DNA of 64,000 bases from IMGVR_UViG_3300043464_002284:173916-237915, one strand, 5' to 3'. Counted from the first letter of the stretch, positions 2,867 to 57,886 are shown. Notes: a model not told the origin generated them from the sequence alone. Numbers and translations are program-made.

Positions 2867-3049
2867 ATGAAACTTCAACCACTAACGGCTATTTTTGCAG
2901 GATTATTTCTAACATCATTAGGATTTAACATTCTTTTGAATGTAGAGATACAAAAACTAAAAAAGCTGGCAAACAAACCAGCAAGAATTATTATAGAAAG
3001 AGAACCGGAAATTCACATCAAACCAAAAGTTTGGGGGTATACTAAATAG
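2867..3049 (+). CDS. Small membrane-anchored hypothetical protein
   Basis: N-terminal hydrophobic helix; stop TAG overlaps the first base of tmRNA. Confidence 0.6.
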   Translation: MKLQPLTAIFAGLFLTSLGFNILLNVEIQKLKKLANKPARIIIEREPEIHIKPKVWGYTK

Positions 3050-3400
3050 GGCTAGTAAAGGTATCGACAGGTAAAATAGATATAGATGGCATCGACTGGT
3101 TAATCGACCGGCCAGTTTAAAAGTCGATTAAAATTGTTAATTGGCGAAGTTTCAACTCTCGCTCTCGCTGCCTAATTAGTTAGGTACGAGTGGGGCGGCA
3201 TGAGCCTTATTACCAAATCATGCTGACTCCGATATTCGGATATGGTAGTCCTACCAGACATAAATAGGAATGATGATTGTACTCAATCTGACTCAGATAA
3301 TTCTGATAGCTTTGTTGGTAGTGCGATAACAACTAAATAACGATGTAGAAGTTTATATTGATGTTTATTCTGGACGCGGGTTCGACTCCCGCCTAGTCCA
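3049..3400 (+). ncRNA. ssrA: tmRNA; tag peptide (A)GEVSTLALAA*
   Basis: Acceptor GGGCTAG/CTAGTCC with G3:U70 Ala identity pair and discriminator A; T arm GCGGG-TTCGACT-CCCGC; 5' TCGAC motif; tag frame 3143-3175 ending GCT GCC TAA. Confidence 0.95.
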
Positions 3401-3408
3401 CTTATATT

Positions 3409-3954
3409 ATGATAAGCTCTAATGATGTACTAACACATACAGTAGATCCAAAATTTGTAGACTTAATAATTACCAATGCTAAAAAAGCAGAAATTGGTGG
3501 CAGGTCTCAAATTAGGAACTCTAAAAGCAGAGTATCCAATCTATCAGAAGATCAATTGGTTGGTCAAATATCCACCTACTGTGCTTCAATGATCCTTACT
3601 GGTTCTCCAGAAGGATATATACAAGCAAGAGATAAAGCAAACGCTAATCCTCTGGCTGGAGATAATGGTGTAGATATATCTGGTCTACCCAATATGGATA
3701 TCAAAGGTAGCCTAATGAGATATTCAAATAACCCATTAAACTATAGATTATTGGTTAGGCCAAAAGAAAGACACGATAATTGGATTTATGTGTTGGCATT
3801 AGTACCAAAAGAAAGACCTTATAAGACTTATCTTGTTGGCTGGGCTAATGATAATGATTTACCTTTAAAGCCCTATGATGGAGAAATAAAGTCTTTACAT
3901 GGAGCATACGTTATAGAAGCTAAGAACCTAAGAAAGATTGCGGAACTAAGATGA
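3409..3954 (+). CDS. Hypothetical phage protein, possible PD-(D/E)XK nuclease fold
   Basis: GVD...MDIKGS pattern; weak. Confidence 0.5.
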   Translation: MISSNDVLTHTVDPKFVDLIITNAKKAEIGGRSQIRNSKSRVSNLSEDQLVGQISTYCASMILTGSPEGYIQARDKANANPLAGDNGVDISGLPNMDIKGSLMRYSNNPLNYRLLVRPKERHDNWIYVLALVPKERPYKTYLVGWANDNDLPLKPYDGEIKSLHGAYVIEAKNLRKIAELR

Positions 3955-5195
3955 ACCGAAGACATTTTTTAAATCACTGTGCCGCAACATCTTCTCTGGT
4001 AGCATCTTCGTCTTTTTTTACTCAGTCTATTTTAGCTAATGCTAATGATTTAAAGAAAAGACATAAGAGTGCTATTCTTTTATGGATGGGTGGTGGCCCA
4101 AGCACTATTGATCTATGGGATTTAAAGCCGGGTGCTGCTACTGGTGGAATTTTTAAGCCAGTATCTACTAGTGCTGATGGTATTCAGATTTGCGAACATC
4201 TGCCACTAATGGCACAGCAAATGCACCACATGAATATTGTACGATCTATGAGTACAAGAGAAGCAGACCACATGAGAGGTCGCTATTATATGCACACAGG
4301 ATATGTTCCTAATCCTAATGTTGAGCATCCTAGTTATGGATCAGTCATTTCTCATGAATTAATGTCTAGCATACCACAACTTGATATTCCTCCATTCGTT
4401 AGTATTGGAGGAACCAGTATTGGTGCTGGATTTTTGGGAACATCTTATTCTCCATTCGTAGTTAATTCTAATGGAACAGTTCGTGATCTTGATATGGGCA
4501 TAGATCAGTCTAGATTAGACCAAAGACTCAATATGCTTAAAACTATCGAAGATAAGTTTGTAAATGAAAAACGTGGAGACTATGCTTCTGACCACTCTAA
4601 ACTTTTGACTAAAACAGTCAAGCTAATGACTAGTCCTCAGATGGAAGTATTCAAAGTATCTAAAGAACCAAAAGAAGTTCAAGAAAGATATGGTAATACA
4701 GGATTTGGCCGAGGTTGTTTGATGGCACGAAGATTGGTGGAAATGGGTGTTCCATTTATTGAGGTTGATCTTGGCGGATGGGATAATCATACTGATATTT
4801 TTAAGACTCTACAGGATCAAAAACTTCCAGAACTAGATAAGGCTATGAGTGCCTTGATAAGCGACCTTAGCGATAAAGGACTGTTGCAGGATACTGCTAT
4901 TATTTGGATGGGTGAATTTGGACGAACGCCAAATATTAATGGTAATGGTGGGCGAGATCATTGGGCTAGAAGTTGGAGTGTCGTTGTTGGTGGAGCAGGA
5001 TTTAAGGGTGGTATTGTTGTTGGAGAAACTAGCAGTGATGGTAAGGAAGTAATTACGGAACCATACTCATCTCAAGACTTAATGGCTAGTGTTCTTAAAT
5101 CATTAGGAATATCTTTAGAAACCAATTTTACTGCTAAAAATGGACGACCAATGAGAATTGCTAATAGTGGCAAACTTATTAAAGAACTATTTTAA
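3951..5195 (+). CDS. DUF1501 family protein with Tat signal (Planctomycete-type)
   Basis: MNRRHFL twin-arginine signal; WMGGGPSTIDLWDLKP, GGWDNH, GEFGRTP, GRDHW motifs. Confidence 0.92.
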   Translation: MNRRHFLNHCAATSSLVASSSFFTQSILANANDLKKRHKSAILLWMGGGPSTIDLWDLKPGAATGGIFKPVSTSADGIQICEHLPLMAQQMHHMNIVRSMSTREADHMRGRYYMHTGYVPNPNVEHPSYGSVISHELMSSIPQLDIPPFVSIGGTSIGAGFLGTSYSPFVVNSNGTVRDLDMGIDQSRLDQRLNMLKTIEDKFVNEKRGDYASDHSKLLTKTVKLMTSPQMEVFKVSKEPKEVQERYGNTGFGRGCLMARRLVEMGVPFIEVDLGGWDNHTDIFKTLQDQKLPELDKAMSALISDLSDKGLLQDTAIIWMGEFGRTPNINGNGGRDHWARSWSVVVGGAGFKGGIVVGETSSDGKEVITEPYSSQDLMASVLKSLGISLETNFTAKNGRPMRIANSGKLIKELF

Positions 5196-5545
5196 TGTCT
5201 AGAAAAATTTGTACTTATTGTGAGAAACGTAAAAACTTAGCAAGTTTTCCCAAACATAGTATGTACAAAGACAATCTTGACAGTAGATGTAGAAAATGTG
5301 TCAAGAAACATTCTAAGATACGAGTTAAGCTACATAAAAAAGCGCCACCAAAACCAGAAGTATGTGAGTGCTGTAAAAAGGTTCCCTACAAATGGGCCTT
5401 AGATCATGATCATGATGATAATAGTTTTAGGGGTTGGCTCTGCGAACCTTGCAATACTGGTATAGGTAAATTGGGTGATGATTTTCAAAGCATCGTTAAC
5501 GCTATGAATTATTTTCTTTCAAGACAAAAACGATATGAAAAATAA
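5195..5545 (+). CDS. Recombination endonuclease VII family nuclease
   Basis: CECC...LDHDH...RGWLCEPCNTGIG. Confidence 0.88.
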   Translation: MSRKICTYCEKRKNLASFPKHSMYKDNLDSRCRKCVKKHSKIRVKLHKKAPPKPEVCECCKKVPYKWALDHDHDDNSFRGWLCEPCNTGIGKLGDDFQSIVNAMNYFLSRQKRYEK

Positions 5546-8117: not shown

Positions 8118-8125
8118 GGTGTATA
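8118..8125 (+). promoter_or_regulatory. Putative late-promoter motif GGTGTATA inside an RBS-occluding hairpin
   Basis: Motif recurs upstream of many genes; stem 8108-8116/8140-8148 covers GGAG. Confidence 0.5.
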
Positions 8126-8154: not shown

Positions 8155-8565
8155 ATGATCAAAGTTATTCTTCGCTCTCTTATATATCCGTGGTTTATCT
8201 TATTTGTAGGATTTTCTATAGGTTTTATTTGCAATTCAGAATGGTTTGGCTACAAATATGTACTTGTGGAAAGATCAGTACGAAATATATTTTTTCCAAT
8301 CAAATATGACGAAAAAGTAGAAGAATGGGTTAAATCTAATGGACGATTAAGATTATGGGCAAGCCTAGACTGTCCAAAAGATTTTGAGATTGTTCATGAG
8401 TTTGTAAAAGGAGAAGAGCATTATTGGGCTGTTTATAAGATCAAAGACAAAAACGGAAAAGAAATTAAAGATATTGGCAGTGTTAGAGTGAAATGGAAAA
8501 CATGGGAATACTACTATAAATTAGATGAGATTTTAGATAAGTCTGGCGTTACGAAATTGGATTGA
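8155..8565 (+). CDS. Membrane-anchored hypothetical protein
   Basis: N-terminal TM helix; GGAG RBS. Confidence 0.65.
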   Translation: MIKVILRSLIYPWFILFVGFSIGFICNSEWFGYKYVLVERSVRNIFFPIKYDEKVEEWVKSNGRLRLWASLDCPKDFEIVHEFVKGEEHYWAVYKIKDKNGKEIKDIGSVRVKWKTWEYYYKLDEILDKSGVTKLD

Positions 8566-8580: not shown

Positions 8581-8609
8581 TTGACAAGACGATAGGACTA
8601 GTGTAGAAT
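8581..8609 (+). promoter_or_regulatory. sigma70-type promoter
   Basis: TTGACA-17-TAGAAT; spacer contains GACGAT. Confidence 0.8.
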
Positions 8610-9720: not shown

Positions 9721-9728
9721 GGTGTATA
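9721..9728 (+). promoter_or_regulatory. Putative late-promoter motif GGTGTATA
   Basis: Exact motif in an intergenic gap lacking TTGACA. Confidence 0.5.
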
Positions 9729-9765: not shown

Positions 9766-9981
9766 ATGGTTGTCAGAACAGCAACAGAATACATGAACGA
9801 TCAGTTAGCTAACAGAGTTAAATCTCTTCAGAAAGCTTTAAATCAAGCTGAAAAAATAATGAATACCCTTGAGATAGAAAATCAAAGACTAAAAGACGTT
9901 CTTGCTAACCTAACGTCAGAAAATAATCAAGGTTATATTCTCAATAGTGAGACCTTTAATGAGCCAGTGCTTACAGTCTAA
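9766..9981 (+). CDS. Coiled-coil hypothetical protein
   Basis: AAGGAGG RBS; heptad pattern. Confidence 0.7.
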   Translation: MVVRTATEYMNDQLANRVKSLQKALNQAEKIMNTLEIENQRLKDVLANLTSENNQGYILNSETFNEPVLTV

Positions 9982-10526: not shown

Positions 10527-11147
10527 ATGGATAAGATAGTGGGTGGTCAGAAAGTATTTTTTACTGCTGATCTTCACCTTGGACATAAGAATATCATAGG
10601 ATATTGTAATCGTCCATTTTCTACTGGTGGAGAGATGGACGCTAAAATTATTTCTTCTATAAACGAAACAGTTGGACAAAACGATATTCTTTACGTTATA
10701 GGAGATTTCTGCCATAAAGGCGGAACGGCTCTATCTTATAGAGAAAGAATAGCTTGCCAAAATGTGCATATTATTCTTGGCAATCATGACGAACCAACTA
10801 AATTCACTAGCGGATTCTCTAGTGTCTCTGATCAAAAAATGATTCTGTATATCAATCAAAAAATATTCATGTGTCATTATCCTATGAGAAGTTGGTCTGG
10901 TAGCTATAGAAAAAGTTGGATGCTCTATGGTCATGTTCATGGCAGGCTGCATCGTGAGGACGTTGCTTCTGGAACCCTCACGCTTGATGTAGGCGTTGAT
11001 AATAAAAGAGATGGGGTAGGGTTTGGTACTCCTTGGAGTTTTAAAGACGTTCAACAGGAATTTCTGGCGAGAACGAAAAAAAAATCAAGGTCGCCCATTG
11101 ACATTGACGATACCATACTGTATAATCGAAGGAACAACGCGAGGTAA
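10527..11147 (+). CDS. Calcineurin-like phosphoesterase
   Basis: FTADLHLGH, GDF, GNHD, CHYP, LYGHVH motifs. Confidence 0.9.
   Translation: MDKIVGGQKVFFTADLHLGHKNIIGYCNRPFSTGGEMDAKIISSINETVGQNDILYVIGDFCHKGGTALSYRERIACQNVHIILGNHDEPTKFTSGFSSVSDQKMILYINQKIFMCHYPMRSWSGSYRKSWMLYGHVHGRLHREDVASGTLTLDVGVDNKRDGVGFGTPWSFKDVQQEFLARTKKKSRSPIDIDDTILYNRRNNAR
11098..11126 (+). promoter_or_regulatory. Consensus sigma70 promoter within the 3' end of the phosphoesterase gene
   Basis: TTGACA-17-TATAAT; spacer contains GACGAT. Confidence 0.85.
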
Positions 11148-19470: not shown

Positions 19471-19517
19471 GGTTTAGTGTCAGGGGTATTGGAAATTCCA
19501 TACCCTTTGACACAACC
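19471..19517 (+). terminator. Strong intergenic hairpin (terminator, processing or regulatory)
   Basis: GTGTCA-GGGGTAT...ATACCCT-T-TGACAC plus flanking GGTT/AACC. Confidence 0.5.
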
Positions 19518-19534: not shown

Positions 19535-19771
19535 ATGGGCAGACATACTAATAAATTAACACAGATGTTACTTAATGACGAATCAGCGAAACAAGCATTT
19601 GTTGAACTGATGAAGAAGTACAATTGTTCTTTCGATGTATATGAACACATAAAAAACAATGGTTTTAGAGGCATTAAATTCTATAACGGATATCAAACTA
19701 TGTGTCATGTTATACGTCGATTAGGGTTCAAGGGGCAAAAAGAGGAAGAAAACCAACAAGAGCAAATGTAA
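19535..19771 (+). CDS. Hypothetical protein
   Basis: AAGGAG RBS. Confidence 0.65.
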   Translation: MGRHTNKLTQMLLNDESAKQAFVELMKKYNCSFDVYEHIKNNGFRGIKFYNGYQTMCHVIRRLGFKGQKEEENQQEQM

Positions 19772-24063: not shown

Positions 24064-24109
24064 ATATAGTGTATGTATAATATGACCAAAATACCCAAGA
24101 GGTTATATT

Positions 24110-25060
24110 ATGGCTAAAAAAAGATCCAATAAAAATAATTGTGGACTGTTTCCGTATATCAAAGAAGAACTATACGGGGATTTCTCAGATGGTCAAAAAA
24201 TACCTTGGTCTATTGAGAAGTTTCATATAGATCAACTGTGGAATGCTTCAACTGGCGAAGGTATTAAGGTTGCTGTTATAGATAGTGGATGTGATTTAAA
24301 TCACGAAGATCTTAAAGACAATTTTATCCAGGGTAAAAACTTTGTTGAACCAAACAAAGACCCTATGGACGAGAACAGTCACGGTACTCATGTTGCTGGT
24401 ACTATCTGTGCAAAAAATAATAATCTGGGGGTTGTTGGAATAGCCCCAAACGTACAGATCATGCCCATTAAAGTCTTTGGGGCTGATGGTCGTGGCGACA
24501 ACAGAACGGTCTCTAATGCGATTGTGTGGGCTGCTGATCATGGCGCTGATATCCTGTGTATGTCTTTGGGTTCTCCGTATCAGTCAGCAGATCTGGAATC
24601 AGCTATTAATTATGCTCTTAAAAAAGGAGCTGTTTCATTTTGTGCTGCTGGCAATGGTGGTGAATCATCAGAAATATATTATCCAGCTAGGTATGAGCAA
24701 ACAGTTAGCACCGGAGCAATTGACGAAAAATTAAATCGAGCTTACTTCACATGCAAGGGTAGCGAATTAGATTTTCTGGCTCCAGGATTTAATATCTTAA
24801 GTACTATTCCTGGAAATAAATATGCTTTGATGAGCGGCACCAGTATGGCTAATCCATTTGTTGTGGGATGCGCATCATTATTGCTGTCTTATGTAAGAAA
24901 AGCCAAACTAAATACTAAATTAAAAACAGCAAATGACTATATAGAAATTTTACAAAAATACACATTTAATTTATCTAATCCTAATTATTCTAATCATAAA
25001 GAATACGAAGGAAACGGTGTGCTAGACCCAAGGAAATTCAACGGATGGCAAGACCTGTGA
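24110..25060 (+). CDS. Subtilisin-like serine peptidase (S8), intracellular type
   Basis: VAVIDSG, HGTHVAG, AAGN, SGTSMA; no signal peptide; N-terminal GLFPY resembles the LIPY motif of ISPs. Confidence 0.95.
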   Translation: MAKKRSNKNNCGLFPYIKEELYGDFSDGQKIPWSIEKFHIDQLWNASTGEGIKVAVIDSGCDLNHEDLKDNFIQGKNFVEPNKDPMDENSHGTHVAGTICAKNNNLGVVGIAPNVQIMPIKVFGADGRGDNRTVSNAIVWAADHGADILCMSLGSPYQSADLESAINYALKKGAVSFCAAGNGGESSEIYYPARYEQTVSTGAIDEKLNRAYFTCKGSELDFLAPGFNILSTIPGNKYALMSGTSMANPFVVGCASLLLSYVRKAKLNTKLKTANDYIEILQKYTFNLSNPNYSNHKEYEGNGVLDPRKFNGWQDL

Positions 25061-39930: not shown

Positions 39931-40930
39931 AATTATAGGTTGTGGACTAAGTGGTGTAACATCAGCAATTATCCTCAAAGAACGAGGATATGATGTGGAA
40001 ATATTTGATAGTAGAAGTCATATAGCCGGAAATTGTTATGACACAAAAGAAAATGATGTAACTGTACACAAGTACGGAGCACATATATTCCACACAAACG
40101 ATGAAGAGGTTTGGAGATTTTTAAATAGATACACATCTTTTAATTCTTATTCACACAAAGTAAGAGCTAATACTGACTATGGTTTAATTTCTATTCCCTA
40201 TAACTACCTTACACGCGATCAGATAGGAAAAGATTTAAGTCCGGAAGAAATACAGAAAACTATTTTTGTTGACTATTCTGAAAGACACTGGGGTATACCG
40301 TGGAAAGATCTGCCAAAATCTATTTCCTCAAGATTACCAAATAAGAGAGAGAACTATGACGATAGATACTTTACAGATAAATATCAAGGTATTCCATCTC
40401 TTGGATATACTTCTATGTTTTCAAATATGCTGGATGGTATAAAAGTAAATCTAGATGTACCAAAAAACCTTTACAAAAAAATTCTTAGAGATAACAATTA
40501 TGACATATTAGTATATACAGGCAAGCCAGATGATTATTTTGAATATTGTTATGGAGAACTAGAATATAGATCTCTCAAATTTGAGCATACTATCGCACCA
40601 AAGAATGGTCTATTTTCTTGGGAAAACGGGGCAGTAATTAATGAATGCAATAAATTATTATATAACAGAACTGTTGATAACTCTGTATTTTTAAATGAAG
40701 AAGTTAATCATACAGTATACACACGAGACTATCCAGAAGAACACAATAGCACCAACGACCCTATCTATCCCAAAAATTTTGGAAGTCACAACGATAAATA
40801 TAGCTTATATAACAGGCTGATGCATCAACAGAATAAAACAATATTTGTTGGAAGATTAGCTACTTATAAATATCTTGATATGTGGATGGCTATTAAACAA
40901 GTTTTTCAAAAACTAGAATTTAATATATGA
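39917..40930 (+). CDS. glf: UDP-galactopyranose mutase
   Basis: GCGLSG, HIAGNCYD, HKYGAHIFHT, WG, YFTDKYQGIP, LEYRSL, YTR, GRLATYKYLDM. Confidence 0.95.
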   Translation: MLKAKIIGCGLSGVTSAIILKERGYDVEIFDSRSHIAGNCYDTKENDVTVHKYGAHIFHTNDEEVWRFLNRYTSFNSYSHKVRANTDYGLISIPYNYLTRDQIGKDLSPEEIQKTIFVDYSERHWGIPWKDLPKSISSRLPNKRENYDDRYFTDKYQGIPSLGYTSMFSNMLDGIKVNLDVPKNLYKKILRDNNYDILVYTGKPDDYFEYCYGELEYRSLKFEHTIAPKNGLFSWENGAVINECNKLLYNRTVDNSVFLNEEVNHTVYTRDYPEEHNSTNDPIYPKNFGSHNDKYSLYNRLMHQQNKTIFVGRLATYKYLDMWMAIKQVFQKLEFNI

Positions 40931-42251: not shown

Positions 42252-42291
42252 ATATTCTCATTTTACACCATTAATTCACAATATCTCACGA

Positions 42292-42319
42292 TTGACAGAA
42301 AACAGACTTTCAGTATTAT
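42292..42319 (+). promoter_or_regulatory. sigma70-type promoter
   Basis: TTGACA-16-TATTAT; divergent GGTGTAAA on the minus strand at 42262-42269. Confidence 0.65.
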
Positions 42320-42345
42320 AAGACATACCAAGGAGAAAACAAGAC

Positions 42346-42876
42346 ATGAATAGGTTGGAGAATCAAAGAGTTTATTTAGCAGGGGCAATGGACAGAGTGG
42401 CTGATCGTGGTGCTACTTGGAGAGACAATATTACTCCATTTTTGACCGAAATGGGCATAGTAGTTTTTAATCCAATAAGCAAACCAACAGATGTAGGCTT
42501 GGAAGATCAAGATACACATACCATCAAAACCAAGCTTAAAGAAAAAGGCAGATACGACGAACTTTCTGCTATGATGAAAATGATTCGATCCGTAGATCTA
42601 AGATTAGTCGATATTAGTGATTTTATGATAGTTAATTTAGACCTTAATGTACATCCTTGTGGTACACTGGAAGAAATTTTTTGGGCTAACCGACAAAAAA
42701 AACCTATCATAGTACATATGGTTCAAGGTAAAAACCAAACGCCAGACTGGCTATTTGGAACAATCCCTCACCAACTAATTTTCTCAACATGGGAAGAAAT
42801 ACAGTCTTATTTGATACATATTCATTCTGCCGAAAACATAGACACTCACAAAAGATGGTATTTTTTTTCAGTATAA
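42346..42876 (+). CDS. Nucleoside 2-deoxyribosyltransferase-like protein
   Basis: RVYLAGAM, WR, VFNP, DLRLVDISDF, GTLEE...A....KP. Confidence 0.8.
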   Translation: MNRLENQRVYLAGAMDRVADRGATWRDNITPFLTEMGIVVFNPISKPTDVGLEDQDTHTIKTKLKEKGRYDELSAMMKMIRSVDLRLVDISDFMIVNLDLNVHPCGTLEEIFWANRQKKPIIVHMVQGKNQTPDWLFGTIPHQLIFSTWEEIQSYLIHIHSAENIDTHKRWYFFSV

Positions 42877-42890
42877 TTTAAGTAGACCAT

Positions 42891-43091
42891 ATGCCCAAAT
42901 ACTATGTTCAGTCTGGACAGATTAAGACAGTAATAGATAGACTAAATCATAAAACAGCAATACTAGATGTTTTACGAGAGCATAGAGGCAAAGGTATGCT
43001 AACTGTTGAAAAAATATGCTTAAGCGAAACCGGATGGACTGCGGACTTAAAATGTTATGATGTTGACCCTTATTTAAAACTAATACAATGA
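42891..43091 (+). CDS. Hypothetical protein
   Basis: Operonic packing. Confidence 0.6.
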   Translation: MPKYYVQSGQIKTVIDRLNHKTAILDVLREHRGKGMLTVEKICLSETGWTADLKCYDVDPYLKLIQ

Positions 43092-43492
43092 TTCAAACAA
43101 TATTTCAAATACAAGACAATATTATTGTTGGGGACTCTAAAATTCACGGTCGTGGAGTTTTTGCTACCAAAGACATACCAGAAGGCACCGTAATAGAAAA
43201 GTGTCCAATGTTAAAACTAGATTTCCCATCAAAATATCATGCTGATCTTAAAGTTCTAGACTACGCCTTTGCTAGACCATCTGAAGCAAATTGGCAGGAC
43301 CACGGATGGGATCTTTATTTGATGATGGGATACGGGATGATGTATAATCATCAAGATATTCCTAACTCATCCATTTCTTTCGATTATGAAAAGAATATAG
43401 CCCAGATAACCGCAACACAATATATTAAAGAAAATTCAGAAATCTACATATCATACGGACCAATGTATTTCCTCAACAAAAAGAAGATATAA
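43088..43492 (+). CDS. SET domain protein (putative lysine methyltransferase)
   Basis: SKIHGRGVFATKDIPEG, MMYNHQDIPN, EIYISYG. Confidence 0.9.
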   Translation: MIQTIFQIQDNIIVGDSKIHGRGVFATKDIPEGTVIEKCPMLKLDFPSKYHADLKVLDYAFARPSEANWQDHGWDLYLMMGYGMMYNHQDIPNSSISFDYEKNIAQITATQYIKENSEIYISYGPMYFLNKKKI

Positions 43493-44180: not shown

Positions 44181-45294
44181 TGAAATCAAGTTAGATTTTG
44201 ACGATGTCTTAATAAGACCAAAGAGATCAACACTCTCAAGTAGATCAGAAGTTAATCTAATTAGAGACTTCCACTTCAAGAATTCTCCAAGAAAAATTTC
44301 CGCTATACCAGTAGTAGTGGCTAATATGGATACTACCGGAACATTCCGTATGGCGAACGTGGTTTGTGAGAATCAAGCCATGGTGGCATTACACAAACAC
44401 TATAAACCAGAACAACTAATAGAATATTATTGTAGCAGTACTAATGATCATAAAGAACTAACGTTTTATTCCACAGGAACATCGTCTTCAGATATTGAAA
44501 AACTTACATATGTTTTCAATGCCATAAAAAATAAAGGATGTCTACTACCCAATATCTGTGTTGATGTTGCTAATGGATATAGTGAAAAATTTGTAAAAAC
44601 AGTAGCTCACATCAGAAAACTATATGAAGAAATAGTAATAATGGCCGGTAATGTCGTCACACCAGAAATGGTGGAAGAGCTTATTTTACATGGTAGGGTC
44701 GATATAGTAAAAGTTGGCATAGGACCAGGGTCGGTTTGTACTACCAGATTAAAAACGGGCGTAGGATACGCACAAATATCAGCTTGTTTGGAATGTTCGG
44801 ACGCTGCTCATGGTCTTGGTGGACACATTTGTGGAGATGGTGGATGTAAACACGTTGGAGATATTTGTAAAGTTTTTGGTAGTAATGCTGATTTTGTAAT
44901 GTGTGGAAACTTTTTCGCTGGATGTGAAGAATGCGAAGGAGAATGGGAATACGAATATCAGGCTGGAGTCGGCGTGGCATTAGCAGAGCCATTCTGGCAA
45001 CCATTTGATCCTGGGACTGGCGGCCCCAAAAGAAAGAAGAACCTAAAATTTTATGGAATGAGTAGCAAAGAAGCTATGGAAAAACATAATAATGGAGTTG
45101 CTAACTATAGAACAAGCGAAGGAAGATGCGTTACGGTTCCATATAAAGGACATGTTGAAGATGTTTTACTAGATATCTTTGGCGGACTAAGAAGCGCATG
45201 TACATACATTGGAGCATCTAAAATGAAAGATTTTGGTAAAAAAACCACATTCGTAATGGTCAACAATACTCATACAAAGACGTACGACAAATGA
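44164..45294 (+). CDS. guaC: GMP reductase
   Basis: LDFDDVLIRPKRS, ANMDT, ICVDVANGY, MAGNV, VGIGPGSVCTTR, CGDGG, FYGMSS, YRTSEG, GGLRSACTYIG. Confidence 0.95.
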   Translation: MQKIINEIKLDFDDVLIRPKRSTLSSRSEVNLIRDFHFKNSPRKISAIPVVVANMDTTGTFRMANVVCENQAMVALHKHYKPEQLIEYYCSSTNDHKELTFYSTGTSSSDIEKLTYVFNAIKNKGCLLPNICVDVANGYSEKFVKTVAHIRKLYEEIVIMAGNVVTPEMVEELILHGRVDIVKVGIGPGSVCTTRLKTGVGYAQISACLECSDAAHGLGGHICGDGGCKHVGDICKVFGSNADFVMCGNFFAGCEECEGEWEYEYQAGVGVALAEPFWQPFDPGTGGPKRKKNLKFYGMSSKEAMEKHNNGVANYRTSEGRCVTVPYKGHVEDVLLDIFGGLRSACTYIGASKMKDFGKKTTFVMVNNTHTKTYDK

Positions 45295-46364
45295 CAAAAA
45301 TCAACCTATCTTGTCCAATTAACCAAACTGGTTATGGTATTTCATCTTTAAATATTCTCAAAGAGTTAATTCAAATATCTGAATTAAGTTATTTGCCTAT
45401 CGGGCAACCTTCTGTTGGAACTCAAGAAGACTACAACATAATACAGTCACTCCTAAACAATCAAGATTTAGCAAATATTAATTCGCCATTTATCAAGATT
45501 TGGCACCAGTTCGATCTTGGTACTCGTTTTGGTCGTGGTAAATATTTTGCATTTCCCTTTTTTGAACTAGATACATTCAACACCAGAGAAAAGCAGCATC
45601 TATCTGTTCCAGATGTTTTATTTGCCACCTCTGAGTGGGCAAAAAACGTAATGACCAATAACGATATAACCACACCCATAGAAGTAATACCTCTGGGAGT
45701 TGATATGTCTATTTTTAATTATCTTGAAAACCCAAAACAGACTGACAAATACATATTTTTAAATATTGGTAAATGGGAAGTTAGAAAAGGTCACGATATT
45801 TTACATGAATTATTTAAAAAAGCTTTTCCAAATGAAACAGATGTAGAGTTATGGGTGCTGGCGTCAGAAACTACTAATTCTTATTCTAGTGAAGAACAAT
45901 TAGTTGAATGGAAAAACTTATATAGTAATGATAACAGAATTAAAATATCTTCTGGAGTTACATCACAAAAAGAAATAGCTCAAATTATGTCGCAAGCTAG
46001 TTGTGGTATTTTTCCTTCCAGAGCAGAGGGATGGAATTTAGAACTATTGGAAATGATGGCCATGAATAAACCAGTTATAGCAACTAACTACTCCGCACAT
46101 ACCGAGTTTTGTGATAAAAATAATTCCTATTTAGTAGATATTGAAACAACAGAACCGGCTAATGATAAGAAGGCATTTTATGGTCAAGGCAATTGGGCTA
46201 AATTAGGCCAAAATCAACAAGATCAGATTATTGAACATATGAGATATGTTTATCAAAACAAGATTCTCACCAACACGTCGGGACTAACAACGGCTAAAAT
46301 CTTTTCTTGGAAAAATTCGGCCAGTAAAATTTTGAGGTGTATACAAGAGTATACAGGAGAATAA
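45291..46364 (+). CDS. GT4 glycosyltransferase
   Basis: TGYG, FLNIGKWEVRKG, PSRAEGWNLELLEMMAMNKPVIATN, FSW. Confidence 0.9.
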   Translation: MTKINLSCPINQTGYGISSLNILKELIQISELSYLPIGQPSVGTQEDYNIIQSLLNNQDLANINSPFIKIWHQFDLGTRFGRGKYFAFPFFELDTFNTREKQHLSVPDVLFATSEWAKNVMTNNDITTPIEVIPLGVDMSIFNYLENPKQTDKYIFLNIGKWEVRKGHDILHELFKKAFPNETDVELWVLASETTNSYSSEEQLVEWKNLYSNDNRIKISSGVTSQKEIAQIMSQASCGIFPSRAEGWNLELLEMMAMNKPVIATNYSAHTEFCDKNNSYLVDIETTEPANDKKAFYGQGNWAKLGQNQQDQIIEHMRYVYQNKILTNTSGLTTAKIFSWKNSASKILRCIQEYTGE

Positions 46365-46876
46365 TTATGCCTATTCCTCAACCAAATCCAAATGAAGATA
46401 AAGAAAAATTTGTATCTCGATGCATGTCTAACGAGACAATGAAAAAAGAGTACAGTGACTCAAAACAAAGAGTAGCTGTTTGCTTAGGTCAAACCAAAGC
46501 AGAAGAAAATTGCTTATTGAGCGAAATTCAAGACGTTATACTGTCTAGTCAAGAATATGATGAGGAGTGGGATGAGTTTGTATATGATATTGAAGCGTTC
46601 CATATTTATGATGAAGACGAAAAGCTAGTAGCTGCCGAAAAAAATGGACGTAAAGTTACGCTTAACAAACCCTTTAGAACACCTGATGGTCCTAAAAAAT
46701 TTAGCGTTTATGTCAAAAATGGTAGTGGCAATGTTGTCAAAGTAAATTTTGGCGACCCAAACATGGAAATCAAAAAAGACATTCCAGCAAGAAGAAAAAG
46801 CTTTAGAGCTAGAATGAGATGTGATACTCCTGGTCCCAAATGGAAAGCCAGATACTGGGCATGTAAGAGCTGGTGA
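46337..46876 (+). CDS. Conserved large-phage protein; start probably ATG 46367
   Basis: MPIPQP...EKFVSRCM...QRVAVC N-module; C-terminal KVTLNKPFRT...KVNFGDP...ARYWAC module; GGAG RBS before 46367. Confidence 0.65.
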   Translation: MYTRVYRRIIMPIPQPNPNEDKEKFVSRCMSNETMKKEYSDSKQRVAVCLGQTKAEENCLLSEIQDVILSSQEYDEEWDEFVYDIEAFHIYDEDEKLVAAEKNGRKVTLNKPFRTPDGPKKFSVYVKNGSGNVVKVNFGDPNMEIKKDIPARRKSFRARMRCDTPGPKWKARYWACKSW

Positions 46877-47450: not shown

Positions 47451-48044
47451 ATGGATCGTATAAATAATATTCTCTCTGATGTTAATAGTGCTCTAACTCA
47501 ACAGGCTAGGTCTTGTGACGATATGATCAATGACCCAAGACTAACACTAGAAGACATGCAAGAACTACTAGAAATACAAGCCATTCAAAAAAAACTTAAT
47601 CAACTAAAAAACACCAAAGCTGAAGATGGCGATTTTTTAGAGGTCGAAAATACGGAAATTGAATCTATTGAACAGGAAATGATGGAGTATAAGAAAGATT
47701 TCTATGACATGAGTGTAGGATCTCTCATGGCAATTATGTCGAACGCTCAGAAAATAGTAGAAAATCTGTCCAATCCCCAAGTAGCAGAAAACTTGACAGA
47801 GAGCTGGCTACAGGGTAAAATCGCCATAACTGAGGACTACATGCGAACTATTCACGATTTTGTCATGTACGTCAACCAGTCTGACGATAACACAGAAGCG
47901 GCCAATCGGCCAGGACTATGGGAAAATATCCGCAGAAAAAAAGAGAGGATGGGCAAAAACTATAAACCAGCAAAGACTGGAGACAAGGACAGACCGGATT
48001 CAAAAACATGGAAAAAGCTAACAGACGAAAACAAAAAAGTCTAA
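47451..48044 (+). CDS. Hypothetical protein with basic C-terminal phage module
   Basis: RPGLWENIRRKK...KDRP tail. Confidence 0.6.
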   Translation: MDRINNILSDVNSALTQQARSCDDMINDPRLTLEDMQELLEIQAIQKKLNQLKNTKAEDGDFLEVENTEIESIEQEMMEYKKDFYDMSVGSLMAIMSNAQKIVENLSNPQVAENLTESWLQGKIAITEDYMRTIHDFVMYVNQSDDNTEAANRPGLWENIRRKKERMGKNYKPAKTGDKDRPDSKTWKKLTDENKKV

Positions 48045-48676
48045 AAGCTCGTAGGACTTTAAAAACAAAAAAACAAGGAAAACAAATGGACAAACAATTT
48101 GAGTCGCTATCTTTCTATATCAACCTAGCTAAAAAAACTATTTCTAAATTCGCCCCAAAGTTTTACAATGGACTCTCTGTTGAAATGCTCAAAAATGAGG
48201 ACGCTGTATCAGATATAGCTACTGCATTGATGTATGCCGATTGGAGATATGATGAAAATCGCAAGGGCAAAACAGGTTTACAGAAAACATTATACTCATA
48301 CCGCAACCAGTGTGCTATATGGGCTATTAAAACTTATGTAACCAATAAGTATAAGCAAACTAAACTATCTAGCTTAGACTTTGAACTGGATAATGAAAAA
48401 TTCTTAGATTCTATTATTCAAGATAAGAAGCACTTGTCTCCTTTAGAGATCATTATAGATCAAGAGTATACTGATAATCTATCTCTGTCTATAGACACTC
48501 TGTTATCTAATAATCTTCTTAGCGAAAAGCAAAAAACGCAAATTAAGATGTATTACTTTGAAGAAAAAACTTTGTCTGAAATAGGAGACACATTCGGGGT
48601 TTCCAGAGAGGCAGTAAGACAGAATATCAAAAGGGGTCTTGAGATAATCAAGAGCTACGATCCAGCAAATGCTTAA
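48008..48676 (+). CDS. sigma70-family RNA polymerase sigma factor; start probably ATG 48086
   Basis: Region 4 HTH LLSEKQK...KTLSEIGDTFGVSREAVRQ; region-2-like N-terminal half. Confidence 0.85.
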   Translation: MEKANRRKQKSLKARRTLKTKKQGKQMDKQFESLSFYINLAKKTISKFAPKFYNGLSVEMLKNEDAVSDIATALMYADWRYDENRKGKTGLQKTLYSYRNQCAIWAIKTYVTNKYKQTKLSSLDFELDNEKFLDSIIQDKKHLSPLEIIIDQEYTDNLSLSIDTLLSNNLLSEKQKTQIKMYYFEEKTLSEIGDTFGVSREAVRQNIKRGLEIIKSYDPANA

Positions 48677-50929: not shown

Positions 50930-50984
50930 TTTTTTGGGGTATAAAGAGTATGACTAGTCATCACTTTTATCCTAGGAGATTAAA

Positions 50985-51527
50985 ATGGCAACACAACAAG
51001 TTAATGGTTCGGCCGTAACTGGCAACTATCGTTTTGGCGGTTCCACCAAAAACAATAATGGTGTTGCTGTCAATGCTGGTAGTCCAACAGGCAGAGTATC
51101 CAAGGTAGGTCTTGGTAGAAGTCATGTAACAACTGGCTCAGTAGTAGTAGACAGAGAAACAACAGACAAAGCTGTTAGTGCTGGCGCTTTTGCTTATAGT
51201 ACACAAAAGCCTATTTCAGCCAGACTATCAGTGGTAGTCGGAGCTACTTCAAGCAATGTTCTTCTTGGACTTGCTAATGTTCCAAGTCAGATTAAAAGTA
51301 TCCACAAAATTGAGTCTCGCAGAGTTGTTCGCAAAGCAACAGCTATGAGAGCTGGTAACTTTAATCTAATTACAGGTAAGTTCACAGTTAACCCAACATC
51401 AGCAACAGATAGTTTCGGTTCGGACGTTGCAGCAAGCCCAACAAGAGCCGTTCCTGGCAAACTTGTTTACAAGCTTGGTTCTCGTACTCCGGTCAGAACT
51501 GATTATAAGGCCAAAACTGGCGGTTGA
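50985..51527 (+). CDS. Putative abundant virion structural protein
   Basis: G/S/T/V-rich, strongly biased codon usage, AGGAG RBS, followed by a strong hairpin. Confidence 0.5.
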   Translation: MATQQVNGSAVTGNYRFGGSTKNNNGVAVNAGSPTGRVSKVGLGRSHVTTGSVVVDRETTDKAVSAGAFAYSTQKPISARLSVVVGATSSNVLLGLANVPSQIKSIHKIESRRVVRKATAMRAGNFNLITGKFTVNPTSATDSFGSDVAASPTRAVPGKLVYKLGSRTPVRTDYKAKTGG

Positions 51528-51553
51528 TTTTATTAGATTTTAAAATTTTCATT

Positions 51554-51597
51554 AAGGTCACTGATACAGTGTATAATACATAAGTATCAGTGGCCTT
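51554..51597 (+). terminator. 14-bp hairpin enclosing AGTGTATA motif
   Basis: AAGGTCACTGATAC/GTATCAGTGGCCTT followed by T-rich sequence. Confidence 0.6.
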
Positions 51598-51943
51598 TCT
51601 GATTTTATGGAGCTTTATTATGAGTGATACTAATCTAGCACATGTCTGGCAAATTGTTGCAACCACCAGCATAGGGATTATAGTTACATTGATCACATTC
51701 TGGGCAGCATTAGTTCGTCATGTTGTAACTAAATCTGAAATTGAGAATTTGATACAAACTCATTCTCCATATTTGCAAGATCGTCAGTTTATTATGGAAA
51801 GGCTAGCCAGCAACAAAGAAAGCCAAAATGCATTTTCCATGGCACTACAAAGGAATACAGAAGTCATGAATGAATTAAAAGTGCAAATTGCAATGTTGGC
51901 TAAAACTCTTGAAGCTATAGAATATAGAATAGAAAAAACTTAA
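51590..51943 (+). CDS. TM plus coiled-coil protein; start probably ATG 51620
   Basis: One TM then heptads; GGAG RBS before 51620. Confidence 0.6.
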   Translation: MAFLILWSFIMSDTNLAHVWQIVATTSIGIIVTLITFWAALVRHVVTKSEIENLIQTHSPYLQDRQFIMERLASNKESQNAFSMALQRNTEVMNELKVQIAMLAKTLEAIEYRIEKT

Positions 51944-54922: not shown

Positions 54923-55387
54923 TTGGTGTATTCTATTATAACAATAGGAGTTTTTATGGATATTAATATTCTCGGTTTAGAACTATCTTCTAAGTTAGAA
55001 GATCTTGTGAATAAAGTTAAAAGCACCCTAGCTAATAGCAAATCTGTTGCTGTAACTCAAGCGTGGGGAATCCTACAACTTGCAGTAGCAGATACAGTAC
55101 AAGTTATTGAAGACAATAATCCTTCTTTGAAGGGATCTAGTAAAAAAGAAATTGCTTTGAGCATGATAAGTAATTTTTATGATAAGGTTTTTCTAGTGGT
55201 GAACATCCCCTTTGTTCCGGTCATGTTCCAGCCTATTATACAAAAGCACATCAAAGCTCTTTTGATGTTGTTGGTAAGTTCGACTATAGATTCTATGGTT
55301 GAAATTTTCAGGCAAACCGGTGTGTTTGAAGATCATAATACCGTTGATCCAAGTGTAGATAATACCCCAAAAGTTTCAGATAAATAA
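54923..55387 (+). CDS. Hypothetical protein; start probably ATG 54956
   Basis: AGGAG RBS before 54956; helical. Confidence 0.6.
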   Translation: MVYSIITIGVFMDINILGLELSSKLEDLVNKVKSTLANSKSVAVTQAWGILQLAVADTVQVIEDNNPSLKGSSKKEIALSMISNFYDKVFLVVNIPFVPVMFQPIIQKHIKALLMLLVSSTIDSMVEIFRQTGVFEDHNTVDPSVDNTPKVSDK

Positions 55388-56292: not shown

Positions 56293-57215
56293 TGCCAAGA
56301 CTATCTCCAAAAGAACTATACGATAATTATCGCAAAGGATTCAGCGGGTGCTTATGGGAACAGCACATATACGATGCTTTAATGGAACACTCTAAGTATC
56401 CATTATTTGGTGATGCTAGTAAAAAAATTAGCGGTAGTGGTAAAGGTAAACTTTCAACACCATACAAGAGCGTATTAAAATTTGATAAGCATCCTTATAA
56501 CGAAAGACAAACCACTGGGGATTGTGTTAGTCATGGAACACGAAATGCTTGTGACGTTTCGCGGGCAGTAGAAATAGATATACATAATGAGAGAGAAGAC
56601 TGGATAGCAAGGGGTGCAACAGAGGCTATCTATGGATATAGAGGATTCAGTGGACAAGGCATGAGTTGTGCAAGAGCAGCTGAATTTGTTAGTAAGGTTG
56701 GTGGCCTTGTTGTTAGAAAGAATTACGGCTTTGTAGACTTCAGTAAATACAATGGTAATTTAGGAGCGGGCTGGGGCGGTAGGGGTCTCCCTGATAAAGT
56801 ATTAGATCTTTCTAATGACCACCAAATTAAGACGGCTTCACTGATTAGAACAGTAGAAGAAGCTCGTGATGCTCTTGCTAATGGTTATGGATTAGCAGTA
56901 TGTTCTAATTATGGATTTAGTAATACCAGAGATAAAAAGGGATTTGCTAGAACATCTGGTAACTGGGCTCATTGTATGGCTTGGATAGCATGTGACGATA
57001 CTGGTAGTGAGCCAGCATTCTTAGTACAAAATAGCTGGGGTAAATGGAATGACGGAGGACATCCAGAATGGGGACCTATTCCAGAAGGGTCATTTTTAAT
57101 TCATGCTGATGCTGCTGCTGGAATGTTATCAGCTAATGGTTCTTATGCTTTTAGTGGTTTTGATGGTTTTCCTCTTCAAAAACTACCAAGTTATGGATTT
57201 GACGACTATTTGTAG
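56292..57215 (+). CDS. Papain-like cysteine peptidase (C1-like)
   Basis: QTTGDCVSHG (Gln oxyanion plus Cys), WAHCMAWIA (His), LVQNSWG (Asn). Confidence 0.88.
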   Translation: MPRLSPKELYDNYRKGFSGCLWEQHIYDALMEHSKYPLFGDASKKISGSGKGKLSTPYKSVLKFDKHPYNERQTTGDCVSHGTRNACDVSRAVEIDIHNEREDWIARGATEAIYGYRGFSGQGMSCARAAEFVSKVGGLVVRKNYGFVDFSKYNGNLGAGWGGRGLPDKVLDLSNDHQIKTASLIRTVEEARDALANGYGLAVCSNYGFSNTRDKKGFARTSGNWAHCMAWIACDDTGSEPAFLVQNSWGKWNDGGHPEWGPIPEGSFLIHADAAAGMLSANGSYAFSGFDGFPLQKLPSYGFDDYL

Positions 57216-57306
57216 TCTAGCCGTTTGAAATAATCAGGGACGTAAAACTAATCAAAGAAATTTGGTGTATATATTTATGTCCTTTTTTAAATAAGAGATT
57301 ATTTCT

Positions 57307-57495
57307 ATGAGACTAATAGACAAAATAGTTTTGAATAGATCAGTAAAAATACTTTTGGATTTTATCTTGTCTGTGCTCAAGATATTTGAAAAACACATTC
57401 CAGAAGATAAGCCTGATGGTCCGGTGAAACCAAAGCCAAAACCCAAAAGACCCTTAAAAGATCTGGTAGATAATATCTTACCATGGAGAAAGTAA
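57307..57495 (+). CDS. Small hypothetical protein
   Basis: Amphipathic N-terminus, PKPKPK, ends PWRK. Confidence 0.55.
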   Translation: MRLIDKIVLNRSVKILLDFILSVLKIFEKHIPEDKPDGPVKPKPKPKRPLKDLVDNILPWRK

Positions 57496-57496
57496 A

Positions 57497-57829
57497 ATGA
57501 ATAAATTATTTATAGGTCTATTTTGCGTTAGCCTATTGTTTACTGGATCTAACTACTATGGGTCAACAACAGCCCCAGTAACTCTTGCTGGAGGAATTAT
57601 TAAAGCCAAGCATACACAGGAGAGTGTCTCAAAATATAAAAGAAAAGATTGTCCAGTTTGCAAGGGTAAAGGATATTATATTAGTGGAGATGGTATTCTT
57701 AAAATAGATTGCACATATTGCGAACCAGACAAAGGAGCTATTACTGTTGGACCAATAAAATCTATAACCCCAACACAAAAAACACCATCTAAAAATAGTT
57801 GCATTACTGGCCAGTGTCCTTTAAAATAA
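57497..57829 (+). CDS. Secreted protein with DnaJ-type CxxCxGxG zinc motif
   Basis: Signal peptide; CPVCKGKG...CTYC. Confidence 0.65.
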   Translation: MNKLFIGLFCVSLLFTGSNYYGSTTAPVTLAGGIIKAKHTQESVSKYKRKDCPVCKGKGYYISGDGILKIDCTYCEPDKGAITVGPIKSITPTQKTPSKNSCITGQCPLK

Positions 57830-57886
57830 TTGGAATGTATGGTGTAGTCTATTGTAGACGCATTCTGTATATGTTTAGGAAACACT

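What the first reader, a model, noticed from the sequence alone, without database searches (positions are those of the whole stretch)
3034..57848. Second promoter class (G/A)GTGTA(T) and a phage sigma factor
Genes lacking TTGACA have GGTGTA(T/A) or a close variant upstream: 8118, 9721, 46336, 54925, 57264, 57841, minus 2824 and 42269; AGTGTA at 24068 and 51568; GGGGTA at 3034 (10 nt before the tmRNA 5' end) and 50936. These include proteases, structural and lysis-like genes. The window encodes a sigma70-family factor (48008..48676), a plausible reader of a late promoter unlike the T4 TATAAATA.
Basis: partly seen in the sequence, partly recalled or inferred. Interest (0 to 1): 0.6.

Follow-up and report, generated by a model that had tools for sequence, protein, structure and literature searches.

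The report
Phage GGTGTAT promoter class and sigma
A complete 238-kb uncultured jumbo phage, probably infecting freshwater Planctomycetes, has a real and conserved one-element promoter-like motif, tGGTGTAT, in front of its replication and structural genes, and it most likely works like the phage-sigma promoters of coliphage phiEco32, but which of the phage's two sigma-like proteins reads it is not shown.

Summary
GGTGTA is not over-represented in the window as a plain hexamer (21 found, 20 expected). It is strongly mis-placed, though: genome-wide, 36% of copies lie 25-75 nt upstream of a gene in the sense orientation, against 3-4% for composition-matched hexamers. It is the most enriched upstream hexamer, ahead of TTGACA. 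The motif is enriched and positionally conserved in related phage contigs.

It is a single element, tGGTGTATa, with no conserved -35. It is too close to the ribosome-binding sites to be a -35 itself. It lacks the conserved -7 T of the phage's own TTGACA/TAGAAT early promoters. It precedes replication, tail, portal and protease genes, so it is a middle-plus-late class, not late only.

The window's sigma (48008-48676) is a genuine two-domain sigma (sigma2 + sigma4). The closest known system is phiEco32 gp36, which reads the single element tAATGTAtA.

The link between sigma and motif remains an inference. A second sigma-like gene lies outside the window, and host sigma-A is not excluded.

The parts
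48008..48676 (+). Sigma-A: a 222-aa sigma-70-family protein. The sigma2-like domain spans about residues 34-116, followed by a disordered linker and a canonical sigma4 HTH at 145-217. There is no sigma3.
   Evidence: Pfam Sigma70_r4 49 bits. TIGR02937 sigma70-ECF 50.8 bits against a cut-off of 42.9. AF2 model and Foldseek/VIA matches to sigma factors; sigma4 aligns to Taq region 4 at rmsd 0.9 A over 49 aa. 1395 metagenomic homologues.
47793..47821 (+). Host-type promoter-like site TTGACA-17-TAAAAT, inside the upstream ORF and 215 nt before the sigma-A start.
   Evidence: 11 of 12 consensus matches. Both hexamers are exact in 12 of 13 related loci while the spacer codons vary.
42292..42319 (+). 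Host-type promoter-like site TTGACA-16-TATTAT, at the head of the gene string that contains sigma-A.
   Evidence: It is not conserved in relatives.
46336..46342 (+). G-class site GGTGTAT, 31 nt before the ATG of gene 46367-46876 and upstream of sigma-A in the same gene string.
   Evidence: GGTGTA is conserved at the orthologous place in 11 of 13 related loci and is GGGGTA in one more. It overlaps the 3' end of the glycosyltransferase ORF.
8118..8124 (+). G-class site GGTGTAT, 37 nt before gene 8155-8565. TTGACC lies 12 nt upstream of the motif.
9721..9727 (+). G-class site GGTGTAT, 45 nt before gene 9766-9981.
2818..2824 (-). G-class site GGTGTAT, 43 nt before the HNH-endonuclease-like gene 2293-2781 (-).
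3034..3040 (+). Variant GGGGTAT, whose first G is 15 nt before the tmRNA 5' end. It lies inside the last codons of the small membrane-protein ORF 2867-3049.
   Evidence: It is not conserved before the tmRNA of relative G006.
3049..3403 (+). tmRNA gene.
   Evidence: Rfam RF00023, 91.5 bits. ARAGORN did not call it.
19483..19489 (+). Variant GGGGTAT, 52 nt before gene 19535-19771.
24068..24074 (+). Variant AGTGTAT, 42 nt before the S8 subtilase gene 24110-25060, which is followed by the trypsin-like gene 25075-25833.
39953..39959 (+). GGTGTAA, 42 nt before a possible start at 39995. It lies inside the ORF if the start is 39917 instead.
42263..42269 (-). GGTGTAA, only 18 nt before the ATG of the AbfB-domain gene 40944-42251 (-). 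The site is ambiguous: it would give a near-leaderless transcript.
50936..50942 (+). Variant GGGGTAT, 49 nt before gene 50985-51527.
   Evidence: Orthologous upstream regions in L010-L013 carry GGTGTAT.
51568..51574 (+). Variant AGTGTAT, 52 nt before gene 51620-51943. It lies in the loop of a terminator-like hairpin.
   Evidence: -27 kcal/mol, z -6.0. AGTGTAT is conserved in L002, L005 and L006.
54925..54931 (+). G-class site GGTGTAT, 31 nt before gene 54956-55387. TTGACC lies 14 nt upstream of the motif.
   Evidence: Relatives carry the motif before this gene or before the preceding one.
57264..57270 (+). G-class site GGTGTAT, 43 nt before the 62-aa ORF 57307-57495.
57841..57847 (+). G-class site GGTGTAG, 46 nt before gene 57887-58798, which is followed by the 1019-aa and 385-aa genes.
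   Evidence: L002 has GGTGTAA at the orthologous place.
1227..1251 (+). Dual site: TTGACA, 12 nt, then GGTGTAA. It lies inside a coding region, 59 nt before gene 1304-1675.

Best explanation
tGGTGTAT(a), with the tolerated variants AGTGTAT, GGGGTAT and GGTGTAA/G, is the single-element core promoter of the phage's non-early genes: replication, virion, proteases and perhaps the tmRNA.

Proposed mechanism. After infection, host RNA polymerase with the host primary sigma transcribes the early region from the cTTGACAA-17-TAGAAT promoters. It also transcribes the sigma gene, from the TTGACA-17-TAAAAT site embedded just upstream of it. The phage sigma (window 48008-48676; sigma2 + linker + sigma4, no sigma3) then binds host core polymerase. 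Its sigma2 domain reads GGTGTAT around -14 to -8, in the way phiEco32 gp36 reads tAATGTAtA. Transcription starts about 6-8 bp downstream of the element. No specific -35 is needed. Sigma4 holds the beta flap and can use a TTGAC hexamer where one is present.

Shown: the motif, its placement, its conservation, the absence of a -35, the gene sets it serves, and the sigma fold.

Inferred: that the motif is a promoter, its register, and which protein reads it.
For: Placement and enrichment.

The element must lie in the -10 region. In many sites the first G is only 28-34 nt from the ATG, with a Shine-Dalgarno sequence at +18 to +25.

No -35: information content is about 0 from -50 to -2 across 50 sites.

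It is unlike the phage's own sigma-70-type -10. T at the '-7' position occurs in 24 of 50 G-class sites against 34 of 38 early-class sites (Fisher P 4e-5).

Conservation in 13 related loci:
- 39 intergenic copies against 9.7 expected.
- The motif is kept at orthologous positions while the flanks diverge, and it shifts between neighbouring genes, which looks like promoter turnover.
- It is also enriched in a 171-kb relative.

Gene sets:
- Early TTGACA sites fall 30 of 38 inside 128.5-192 kb; G sites fall 19 of 28 outside it (P 3e-4).
- G sites precede PhoH, the DnaE operon, tail-like genes, the tail tube and the portal.

Sigma-A is a true sigma and has a conserved host-type promoter in front of it.

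Precedent: gp36 is 214 aa, built as NTD/linker/CTD. It reads the single element tAATGTAtA centred at -11.5, with the TSS 6-8 bp downstream (PMC8948821, PMC12276001).

A weak profile alignment puts the family-invariant Y98, R99 and W105 of sigma-A on gp36 Y83, R84 and W90, the residues that stack on -11G and -12T. It puts different residues (A106, Y110) on gp36 S91 and N95, which read the two bases that differ between the motifs, AA against GG.

No third motif was found.
Against: - No transcript 5' ends are available; no RNA run was listed.
- The alignment to gp36 is statistically insignificant (hhalign E 0.027, probability 1.9%). The second sigma-like protein aligns about as weakly.
- Sigma-A has a canonical sigma4 whose recognition helix GVSREAVRQ resembles that of primary sigma, GVTRERIRQ. 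That would predict a TTGACA-like -35, yet only about 5 G sites have one.
- Both sigma genes have early-type and G-type sites upstream, so cascade logic does not separate them.
- Early promoters are also G-rich at -15 to -13, so a host-sigma reading of GGTG is not excluded.
- The site before the tmRNA is not conserved in the one relative checked.
Confidence: 0.45

Rival explanations
1. The motif is a promoter, but it is read by the second phage sigma-like protein, alone or together with sigma-A. That protein is encoded at genome 124452-125150 (minus strand), outside the window. It is 232 aa, with a sigma2 region followed by four invariant cysteines and a small helical C-terminal domain.
For: - Pfam Sigma70_r2 scores 23.0 bits against a cut-off of 24, and TIGR02937 gives E 2e-4.
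- It has 1686 homologues, found on the same large phage contigs as sigma-A.
- All top fold matches are sigma factors; the SigE N-terminal domain matches with probability 0.99.
- It has no recognisable sigma4 HTH by sequence, which would fit a promoter without a -35.
- Only one non-host motif exists for two phage sigma-like proteins.
Against: - Its sigma2 lacks the Y-R...W arrangement that sigma-A shares with gp36.
- Its fold matches are weak (E 0.03 or worse).
- The only co-occurrence test was uninformative: the 171-kb relative keeps the motif and lacks this gene, but that contig also lacks the portal region and is probably a fragment.
Confidence: 0.2
2. The motif is a -35-independent promoter read by the host primary sigma. 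GGTG would act as an upstream extension of a TAnnnT -10. A phage factor that blocks -35 recognition might help, as in Thermus phage P23-45 (that system is recalled from my own knowledge, not checked here).
For: - GGTG abuts a TA, so the sites can be read as GGTG + TAnnnT.
- Early TTGACA promoters of the same phage prefer G at -13 (23 of 38) and G or T at -14.
- Several sites combine TTGAC(A/C) at 16-18 nt with GGTG-TAnnnT.
Against: - T at -7, nearly invariant in sigma-70-type -10 elements and 89% in this phage's early class, is only 48% here.
- The TG is one base out of the canonical TGn register.
- The conserved part is GGTGTAT, not the hexamer.
- The class is tied to a different gene set from the early class.
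- Eight strict TTGACA/TAnAAT matches in putative host genomes show no GGTG or TG preference, though they are too few to judge.
Confidence: 0.22
3. The motif is not a promoter. It would instead be an RNA-level or DNA-binding signal, for example a processing site or a regulator operator, that happens to lie in 5' regions.
For: No TSS data exist. One copy lies in a terminator hairpin loop, and some copies lie in the 3' ends of ORFs.
Against: - It is strand-specific.
- Its distance to the ATG varies (28-73 nt) but it is never closer than an SD-plus-leader would allow.
- A/T-rich sequence follows it.
- It is the only strong signal in about 60% of non-early upstream regions.
- It is nearly identical in form to an experimentally mapped phage promoter element.
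Confidence: 0.08

Closest known systems
Escherichia phage phiEco32 gp36 sigma and its middle/late promoters (tAATGTAtA)
   Same: - Both are small two-domain phage sigmas: a sigma2-like N-terminal domain, a long linker and a sigma4-like C-terminal domain (214 aa against a core of about 196-222 aa).
- Both promoters are one conserved 8-9 bp element around -11.5 with no -35 consensus, placed upstream of non-early genes.
- The two elements match at t..TGTAta and differ only at the two bases before TGTA (AA against GG).
- Y-R-x5-W in the last sigma2 helix is shared in a weak alignment.
   Different: - There is no significant sequence homology (hhalign E 0.027; no PDB sequence hit).
- Sigma-A has a canonical sigma4, 37% identical to Taq region 4. 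The gp36 C-terminal domain is atypical.
- A gp79-like partner was not looked for.
- The phage is a 238-kb myovirus-like jumbo phage of a different host phylum, and it has a second sigma-like gene.
- Nothing here is experimentally mapped.
T4 late transcription (gp55 with gp33, promoter TATAAATA at -10)
   Same: A phage-encoded sigma-like protein and a single -10-region element without a -35, serving late genes. An RIIA homologue is present in the window.
   Different: The motif is different. Sigma-A has a full sigma4. The class also covers replication genes. gp55, gp33 and clamp dependence were not tested.
Bacillus phage SPO1 sigma cascade (gp28, then gp33/gp34); recalled from my own knowledge
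   Same: Host sigma reads the early genes, and phage sigmas replace it for later classes. Two phage sigma-like genes are present.
   Different: SPO1 promoters are bipartite (-35 and -10), with one motif per sigma. Here only one non-host motif is detectable.
Extended -10 (TGn) sigma-70 promoters
   Same: They are -35-independent, with extra conserved bases just upstream of a TA.
   Different: The TG is out of register by one base, the -7 T is not conserved, and the conserved core is GGTGTAT.

Membership tests
Sigma-70 family, group-4 (ECF-like) architecture, tested for window ORF 48008-48676 | Sigma2 domain (regions 2.1-2.4) | tested here: met
   TIGR02937 spans residues 41-216 at 50.8 bits, above the 42.9 cut-off. 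The AF2 model has four helices at 34-116, aligned to sigma2 of many sigma factors. Pfam Sigma70_r2 itself did not hit.
Sigma-70 family, group-4 (ECF-like) architecture, tested for window ORF 48008-48676 | Sigma4 HTH domain | tested here: met
   PF04545 scores 49 bits. Rmsd is 0.9 A over 49 aa to Taq sigma region 4 bound to -35 DNA. The alignment pairs GVSREAVRQ with GVTRERIRQ.
Sigma-70 family, group-4 (ECF-like) architecture, tested for window ORF 48008-48676 | No sigma3 domain | tested here: met
   Residues 117-144 are low-confidence and non-helical in the model, and there is no room for a three-helix sigma3.
Sigma-70 family, group-4 (ECF-like) architecture, tested for window ORF 48008-48676 | Binds core RNA polymerase and confers promoter-specific initiation | not testable with these tools
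   This needs biochemistry.
phiEco32 gp36-type single-element phage promoters | One conserved element of about 8-9 bp in the -10 region with a TGTA core | tested here: met
   The logo of 50 sites is tGGTGTATa, against tAATGTAtA for phiEco32.
phiEco32 gp36-type single-element phage promoters | No conserved -35 element | tested here: met
   Information content is about 0 upstream of the motif. After masking, EM finds nothing above shuffled sequence.
phiEco32 gp36-type single-element phage promoters | Transcription starts 6-8 bp downstream of the element | not testable with these tools
   No RNA run was listed. The only indirect hints are the distances to the SD sequences and the tmRNA 5' end lying 15 nt after the first G.
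phiEco32 gp36-type single-element phage promoters | Located before middle and late genes, not early genes | tested here: inconclusive
   The gene functions fit: replication, tail, portal and proteases. The regional split from the TTGACA class is significant. Timing was not measured, and 9 of 28 sites lie in the early region.
phiEco32 gp36-type single-element phage promoters | Reader is a homologue of gp36 | tested here: inconclusive
   hhalign probability is 1.9%, E 0.027. The domain plan and the Y-R-x5-W residues are shared, but homology beyond the sigma superfamily is not shown.
Extended -10 sigma-70 promoters | TG at -15/-14, one base before a TATAAT-like hexamer with conserved A-11 and T-7 | tested here: not met
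   The TG abuts the TA, and T at the -7 position is 48% against 89% in the early class.
T4-type late promoters | TATAAATA at -10 | tested here: not met
   The enriched motif is GGTGTAT. TATAAATA-like words are not among the enriched upstream k-mers.

The most novel reading that the evidence does not exclude
Sigma-A and phiEco32 gp36 would belong to one widespread but so far unrecognised lineage of phage sigma factors that read single 'nnTGTAt' elements with the same Y/R/W fork-junction residues. The two bases before TGTA would be set by two variable residues in the last sigma2 helix. In this jumbo-phage family a second, cysteine-rich sigma-like protein would act as a partner or as a further switch on the same element.
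Probability: 0.2. Interest if true: 0.65.

Novelty: new member of a known kind. Interest (0 to 1): 0.45.

Why it matters
If this is right, a large and globally distributed group of uncultured freshwater jumbo phages has a readable transcription programme. Each sigma family in this group has more than 1000 homologues in metagenomes, and the probable hosts are Planctomycetes. Host-type early promoters and a GGTGTAT middle/late class can be used to annotate operons and temporal classes directly from sequence. The near-identity in form to the phiEco32 gp36 element offers a natural experiment on how a minimal sigma reads a -10-only promoter. It is a prediction, not a new principle: phage sigma cascades and single-element phage promoters are already known.

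Tried and rejected
- DNA similarity to GenBank phages: no match. The sigma has no named phage relative.
- RNA evidence: none was listed for a 10-kb stretch.
- GGTGTA as a -35 element: rejected. Many sites are only 28-34 nt from the ATG with an SD in between.
- A third promoter class for the second sigma-like protein: not found, by k-mers or by EM after masking.
The 171-kb contig G009 keeps the motif and sigma-A and has no match to the second protein even with hmmsearch --max. But it also lacks any match to the portal region, so it is probably a fragment despite its completeness label.
- Conservation of the site before the tmRNA: not seen in G006, where the tmRNA follows the homologous small ORF without the motif.
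- Host promoter preferences: strict TTGACA/TAnAAT matches in five putative host-lineage genomes were too few (8 against 3 control) to show whether hosts favour G/TG before the -10.
- The high-identity DUF1501 hits as phage contigs mis-binned into MAGs: rejected. They are 60-70% GC, with unrelated flanks.
- Literature search for GGTGTA together with phage sigma, or for Planctomycete phages with DUF1501: nothing relevant.

Full report
**Context.** The window is the last 64 kb of a complete virus record of 237,915 bp with direct terminal repeats. Its GC content is 36.8%. It has no close relative among GenBank phages. It does have many relatives in metagenomes and IMG/VR.

The genome encodes:
- RIIA.
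- A split DnaE-type polymerase, helicase, primase, ribonucleotide reductase and PhoH.
- Tail-like proteins, a tail tube and a portal.
- 12 tRNAs and a tmRNA.

A DUF1501 gene at window 3951-5195 is 79-80% identical in protein to genes on 60-70% GC contigs of freshwater Planctomycetaceae/Pirellulales MAGs. The flanks of those contigs are unrelated to the phage. The host is therefore probably a freshwater Planctomycete. This is an inference.

**Observation.** All the listed sites exist. As a plain word GGTGTA is not over-represented in the window: 21 found against 20.1 expected. Its placement is highly non-random:
- Genome-wide, 26 of 64 copies fall in the 10.3% of the genome that is intergenic.
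- 23 of 64 copies lie 25-75 nt upstream of a same-strand start, in a zone that holds 2.9% of positions. The other 59 permutations of the same letters average 3.8%.
- It is the most enriched hexamer in upstream regions, ahead of TTGACA.
- Among single-base variants of GGTGTAT, only AGTGTAT, GGGGTAT, GGTGTAA and GGTGTAG are also enriched.
- An EM search finds TgGTGTATta in about 60% of the 52 upstream regions outside the early region. After masking, nothing exceeds a shuffled control.

**Anatomy.** I aligned 50 sites from this genome and its relatives. The logo is tGGTGTATa followed by A/T-rich sequence, with essentially no information from -50 to -2.
- The first G lies 28-73 nt (median 45) before the start codon.
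- In the closest cases the Shine-Dalgarno sequence begins about 18 nt after it. The element must therefore sit in the -10 region and cannot be a -35.
- Read as GGTG + TAnnnT, the last hexamer position is T in only 24 of 50 sites.
- The phage's own early promoters have the form cTTGACAA, 16-17 nt, (G-rich) TAGAAT/TATAAT. In those, the same position is T in 34 of 38 (P 4e-5).
- So the conserved unit is GGTGTAT itself, not a sigma-70 hexamer.
- About five sites also have TTGAC(A/C) at a suitable distance, including 8118 and 54925.

**Gene sets.**
- Early-type promoters cluster in the 128.5-192 kb region of small genes: 30 of 38 sites.
- G sites lie mostly outside it: 19 of 28 sites (P 3e-4).
- G sites precede PhoH and the operon holding the two DnaE pieces.
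- They precede tail-like genes at 2.2, 12 and 13 kb, the tail tube, and a gene next to the portal. The portal itself has AGTGTAT.
- In the window they precede the S8 and trypsin-like proteases, an HNH endonuclease and several unknown genes.
- The class is thus 'non-early' (middle plus late), not late only.

**Conservation.** In 13 IMG/VR loci around sigma homologues (53-80% identity), 39 of 102 GGTGTA copies are intergenic, against 9.7 expected.
- The site before the orthologue of gene 46367 is GGTGTA in 11 of 13 loci and GGGGTA in one more.
- The motif appears before the orthologue of 54578 in seven loci, and before 54956 in the window and in L001. That pattern is the one expected of promoter turnover.
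- AGTGTAT before the orthologue of 51620 recurs in L002, L005 and L006.
- In a 171-kb relative, GGTGTA is again among the three most enriched upstream hexamers.

**The sigma in the window.** ORF 48008-48676 passes the sigma70-ECF superfamily model and Pfam Sigma70_r4.
- The AF2 model has a four-helix sigma2-like domain (34-116), a disordered linker and a four-helix sigma4 (145-217). There is no sigma3.
- All strong fold matches are sigma factors. Sigma4 superposes on Taq region 4 at 0.9 A.
- Its recognition helix GVSREAVRQ resembles GVTRERIRQ of primary sigma.
- Inside the upstream ORF lies TTGACA-17-TAAAAT (47793-47821). Both hexamers are exact in 12 of 13 relatives while the spacer codons vary. 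This suggests that host holoenzyme transcribes the sigma gene early.
- The conserved G site at 46336 lies further upstream in the same gene string.

**Closest known system.** In phiEco32, middle and late promoters are a single element, tAATGTAtA, centred at -11.5, with starts 6-8 bp downstream. They are read by gp36, a 214-aa protein with a sigma2-like NTD, a linker and a sigma4-like CTD (PMC8948821, PMC12276001).
- The present element differs only at the two bases before TGTA.
- In the gp36 structure, W90 stacks on -12T, Y83 stacks on -11G and R84 binds a phosphate. S91 and N95 read -13A and -14A.
- A weak profile alignment (E 0.027) places the family-invariant Y98, R99 and W105 of sigma-A on Y83, R84 and W90. 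It places A106 and Y110 on S91 and N95.
- This is suggestive but not significant.
- In the gp36 register the tmRNA site predicts a start at about 3048-3050. Rfam places the tmRNA 5' end at 3049.
- That site lies within an ORF and is not conserved in relative G006.

**Complication.** The genome has a second sigma-like gene outside the window, at genome 124452-125150 on the minus strand.
- It has a near-threshold Sigma70_r2 match, four invariant cysteines after region 2, and weak but consistent fold matches to sigma factors.
- Its family is as large as that of sigma-A and is found on the same contigs.
- Its operon has both an early-type and a G-type site, in this genome and in G006.
- An attempt to separate the two candidates with a relative lacking the second gene failed, because that contig also lacks the portal region.

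**Verdict.** The motif class is real, conserved and promoter-like.
- The best-supported mechanism is a phage-sigma-directed, -10-only promoter of the gp36 type.
- The window's sigma is the leading but unproven reader, at about 0.45.
- The rivals are the second sigma-like protein (about 0.2), host sigma-A (about 0.2) and a non-promoter role (under 0.1).

Noticed in passing
Outside the window: genome 124452-125150 (-), which is L020:4452-5150:-: A second sigma-like protein of 232 aa. It has a near-threshold Sigma70_r2 match, four invariant Cys after region 2 (a possible zinc site) and a small helical C-terminal domain. It has 1686 homologues on the same phage contigs.
   Followed up: partly
Window 47793-47821: TTGACA-17-TAAAAT embedded in the ORF upstream of the sigma gene. 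Both hexamers are exact in 12 of 13 relatives although the codons between them vary. This looks like a promoter maintained inside coding sequence.
   Followed up: yes
Early promoters, e.g. window 542-570, 8581-8609, 11098-11126; genome 137-192 kb: 13 of 38 TTGACA-class promoters carry CGATA (often CCGATAA/C) 3-5 nt after the -35 hexamer. This is a conserved spacer element of unknown role, possibly an operator for early shut-off.
   Followed up: partly
Genome 132.7-136.7 kb (L020:12650-16700): A sub-type of early promoter, ...TGGTA(T/G)AAT followed at once by GTCGATA, seen upstream of three small ORFs.
   Followed up: no
Window 3951-5195: The DUF1501 gene is 79-80% identical in protein to genes of 60-70% GC freshwater Planctomycetota MAGs, although the phage is 37% GC. 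It is a probable host-derived gene and a host clue. The GC gap of about 30 points is striking, alongside 12 tRNAs and a tmRNA.
   Followed up: partly
Window 2867-3403, and L112:1500-2070 (-): The tmRNA is directly preceded by a small membrane-protein ORF, both here and in a 186-kb relative. Here the ORF's stop codon overlaps the tmRNA 5' end. ARAGORN misses this tmRNA; Rfam finds it at 91.5 bits.
   Followed up: partly
Window 51549-51602: A strong hairpin (-27 kcal/mol, z -6) followed by a U-tract, with AGTGTAT in its loop. It looks like a terminator and a promoter-like site superposed between genes 50985-51527 and 51620-51943.
   Followed up: partly
Genome 41507-43372 and 44294-45913 (L016): The DnaE-type polymerase is encoded in two separate ORFs, with two small genes and a G site between them.
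   Followed up: no
Genome 81201-100883 (-): A single ORF of 6560 aa in the virion-gene block, next to ORFs of 2591, 2232 and 1833 aa.
   Followed up: no
Window 48008-48088: The sigma has a 27-37 aa Lys/Arg-rich N-terminal extension, found only in its closest relatives. Most family members start at the equivalent of residue 38.
   Followed up: no
G009 (IMGVR_UViG_3300024324_000009, L120-L128): This 171-kb contig is labelled 100% complete but has no detectable homologue of the portal region of the window's genome. The completeness estimate looks unreliable for this group.
   Followed up: partly
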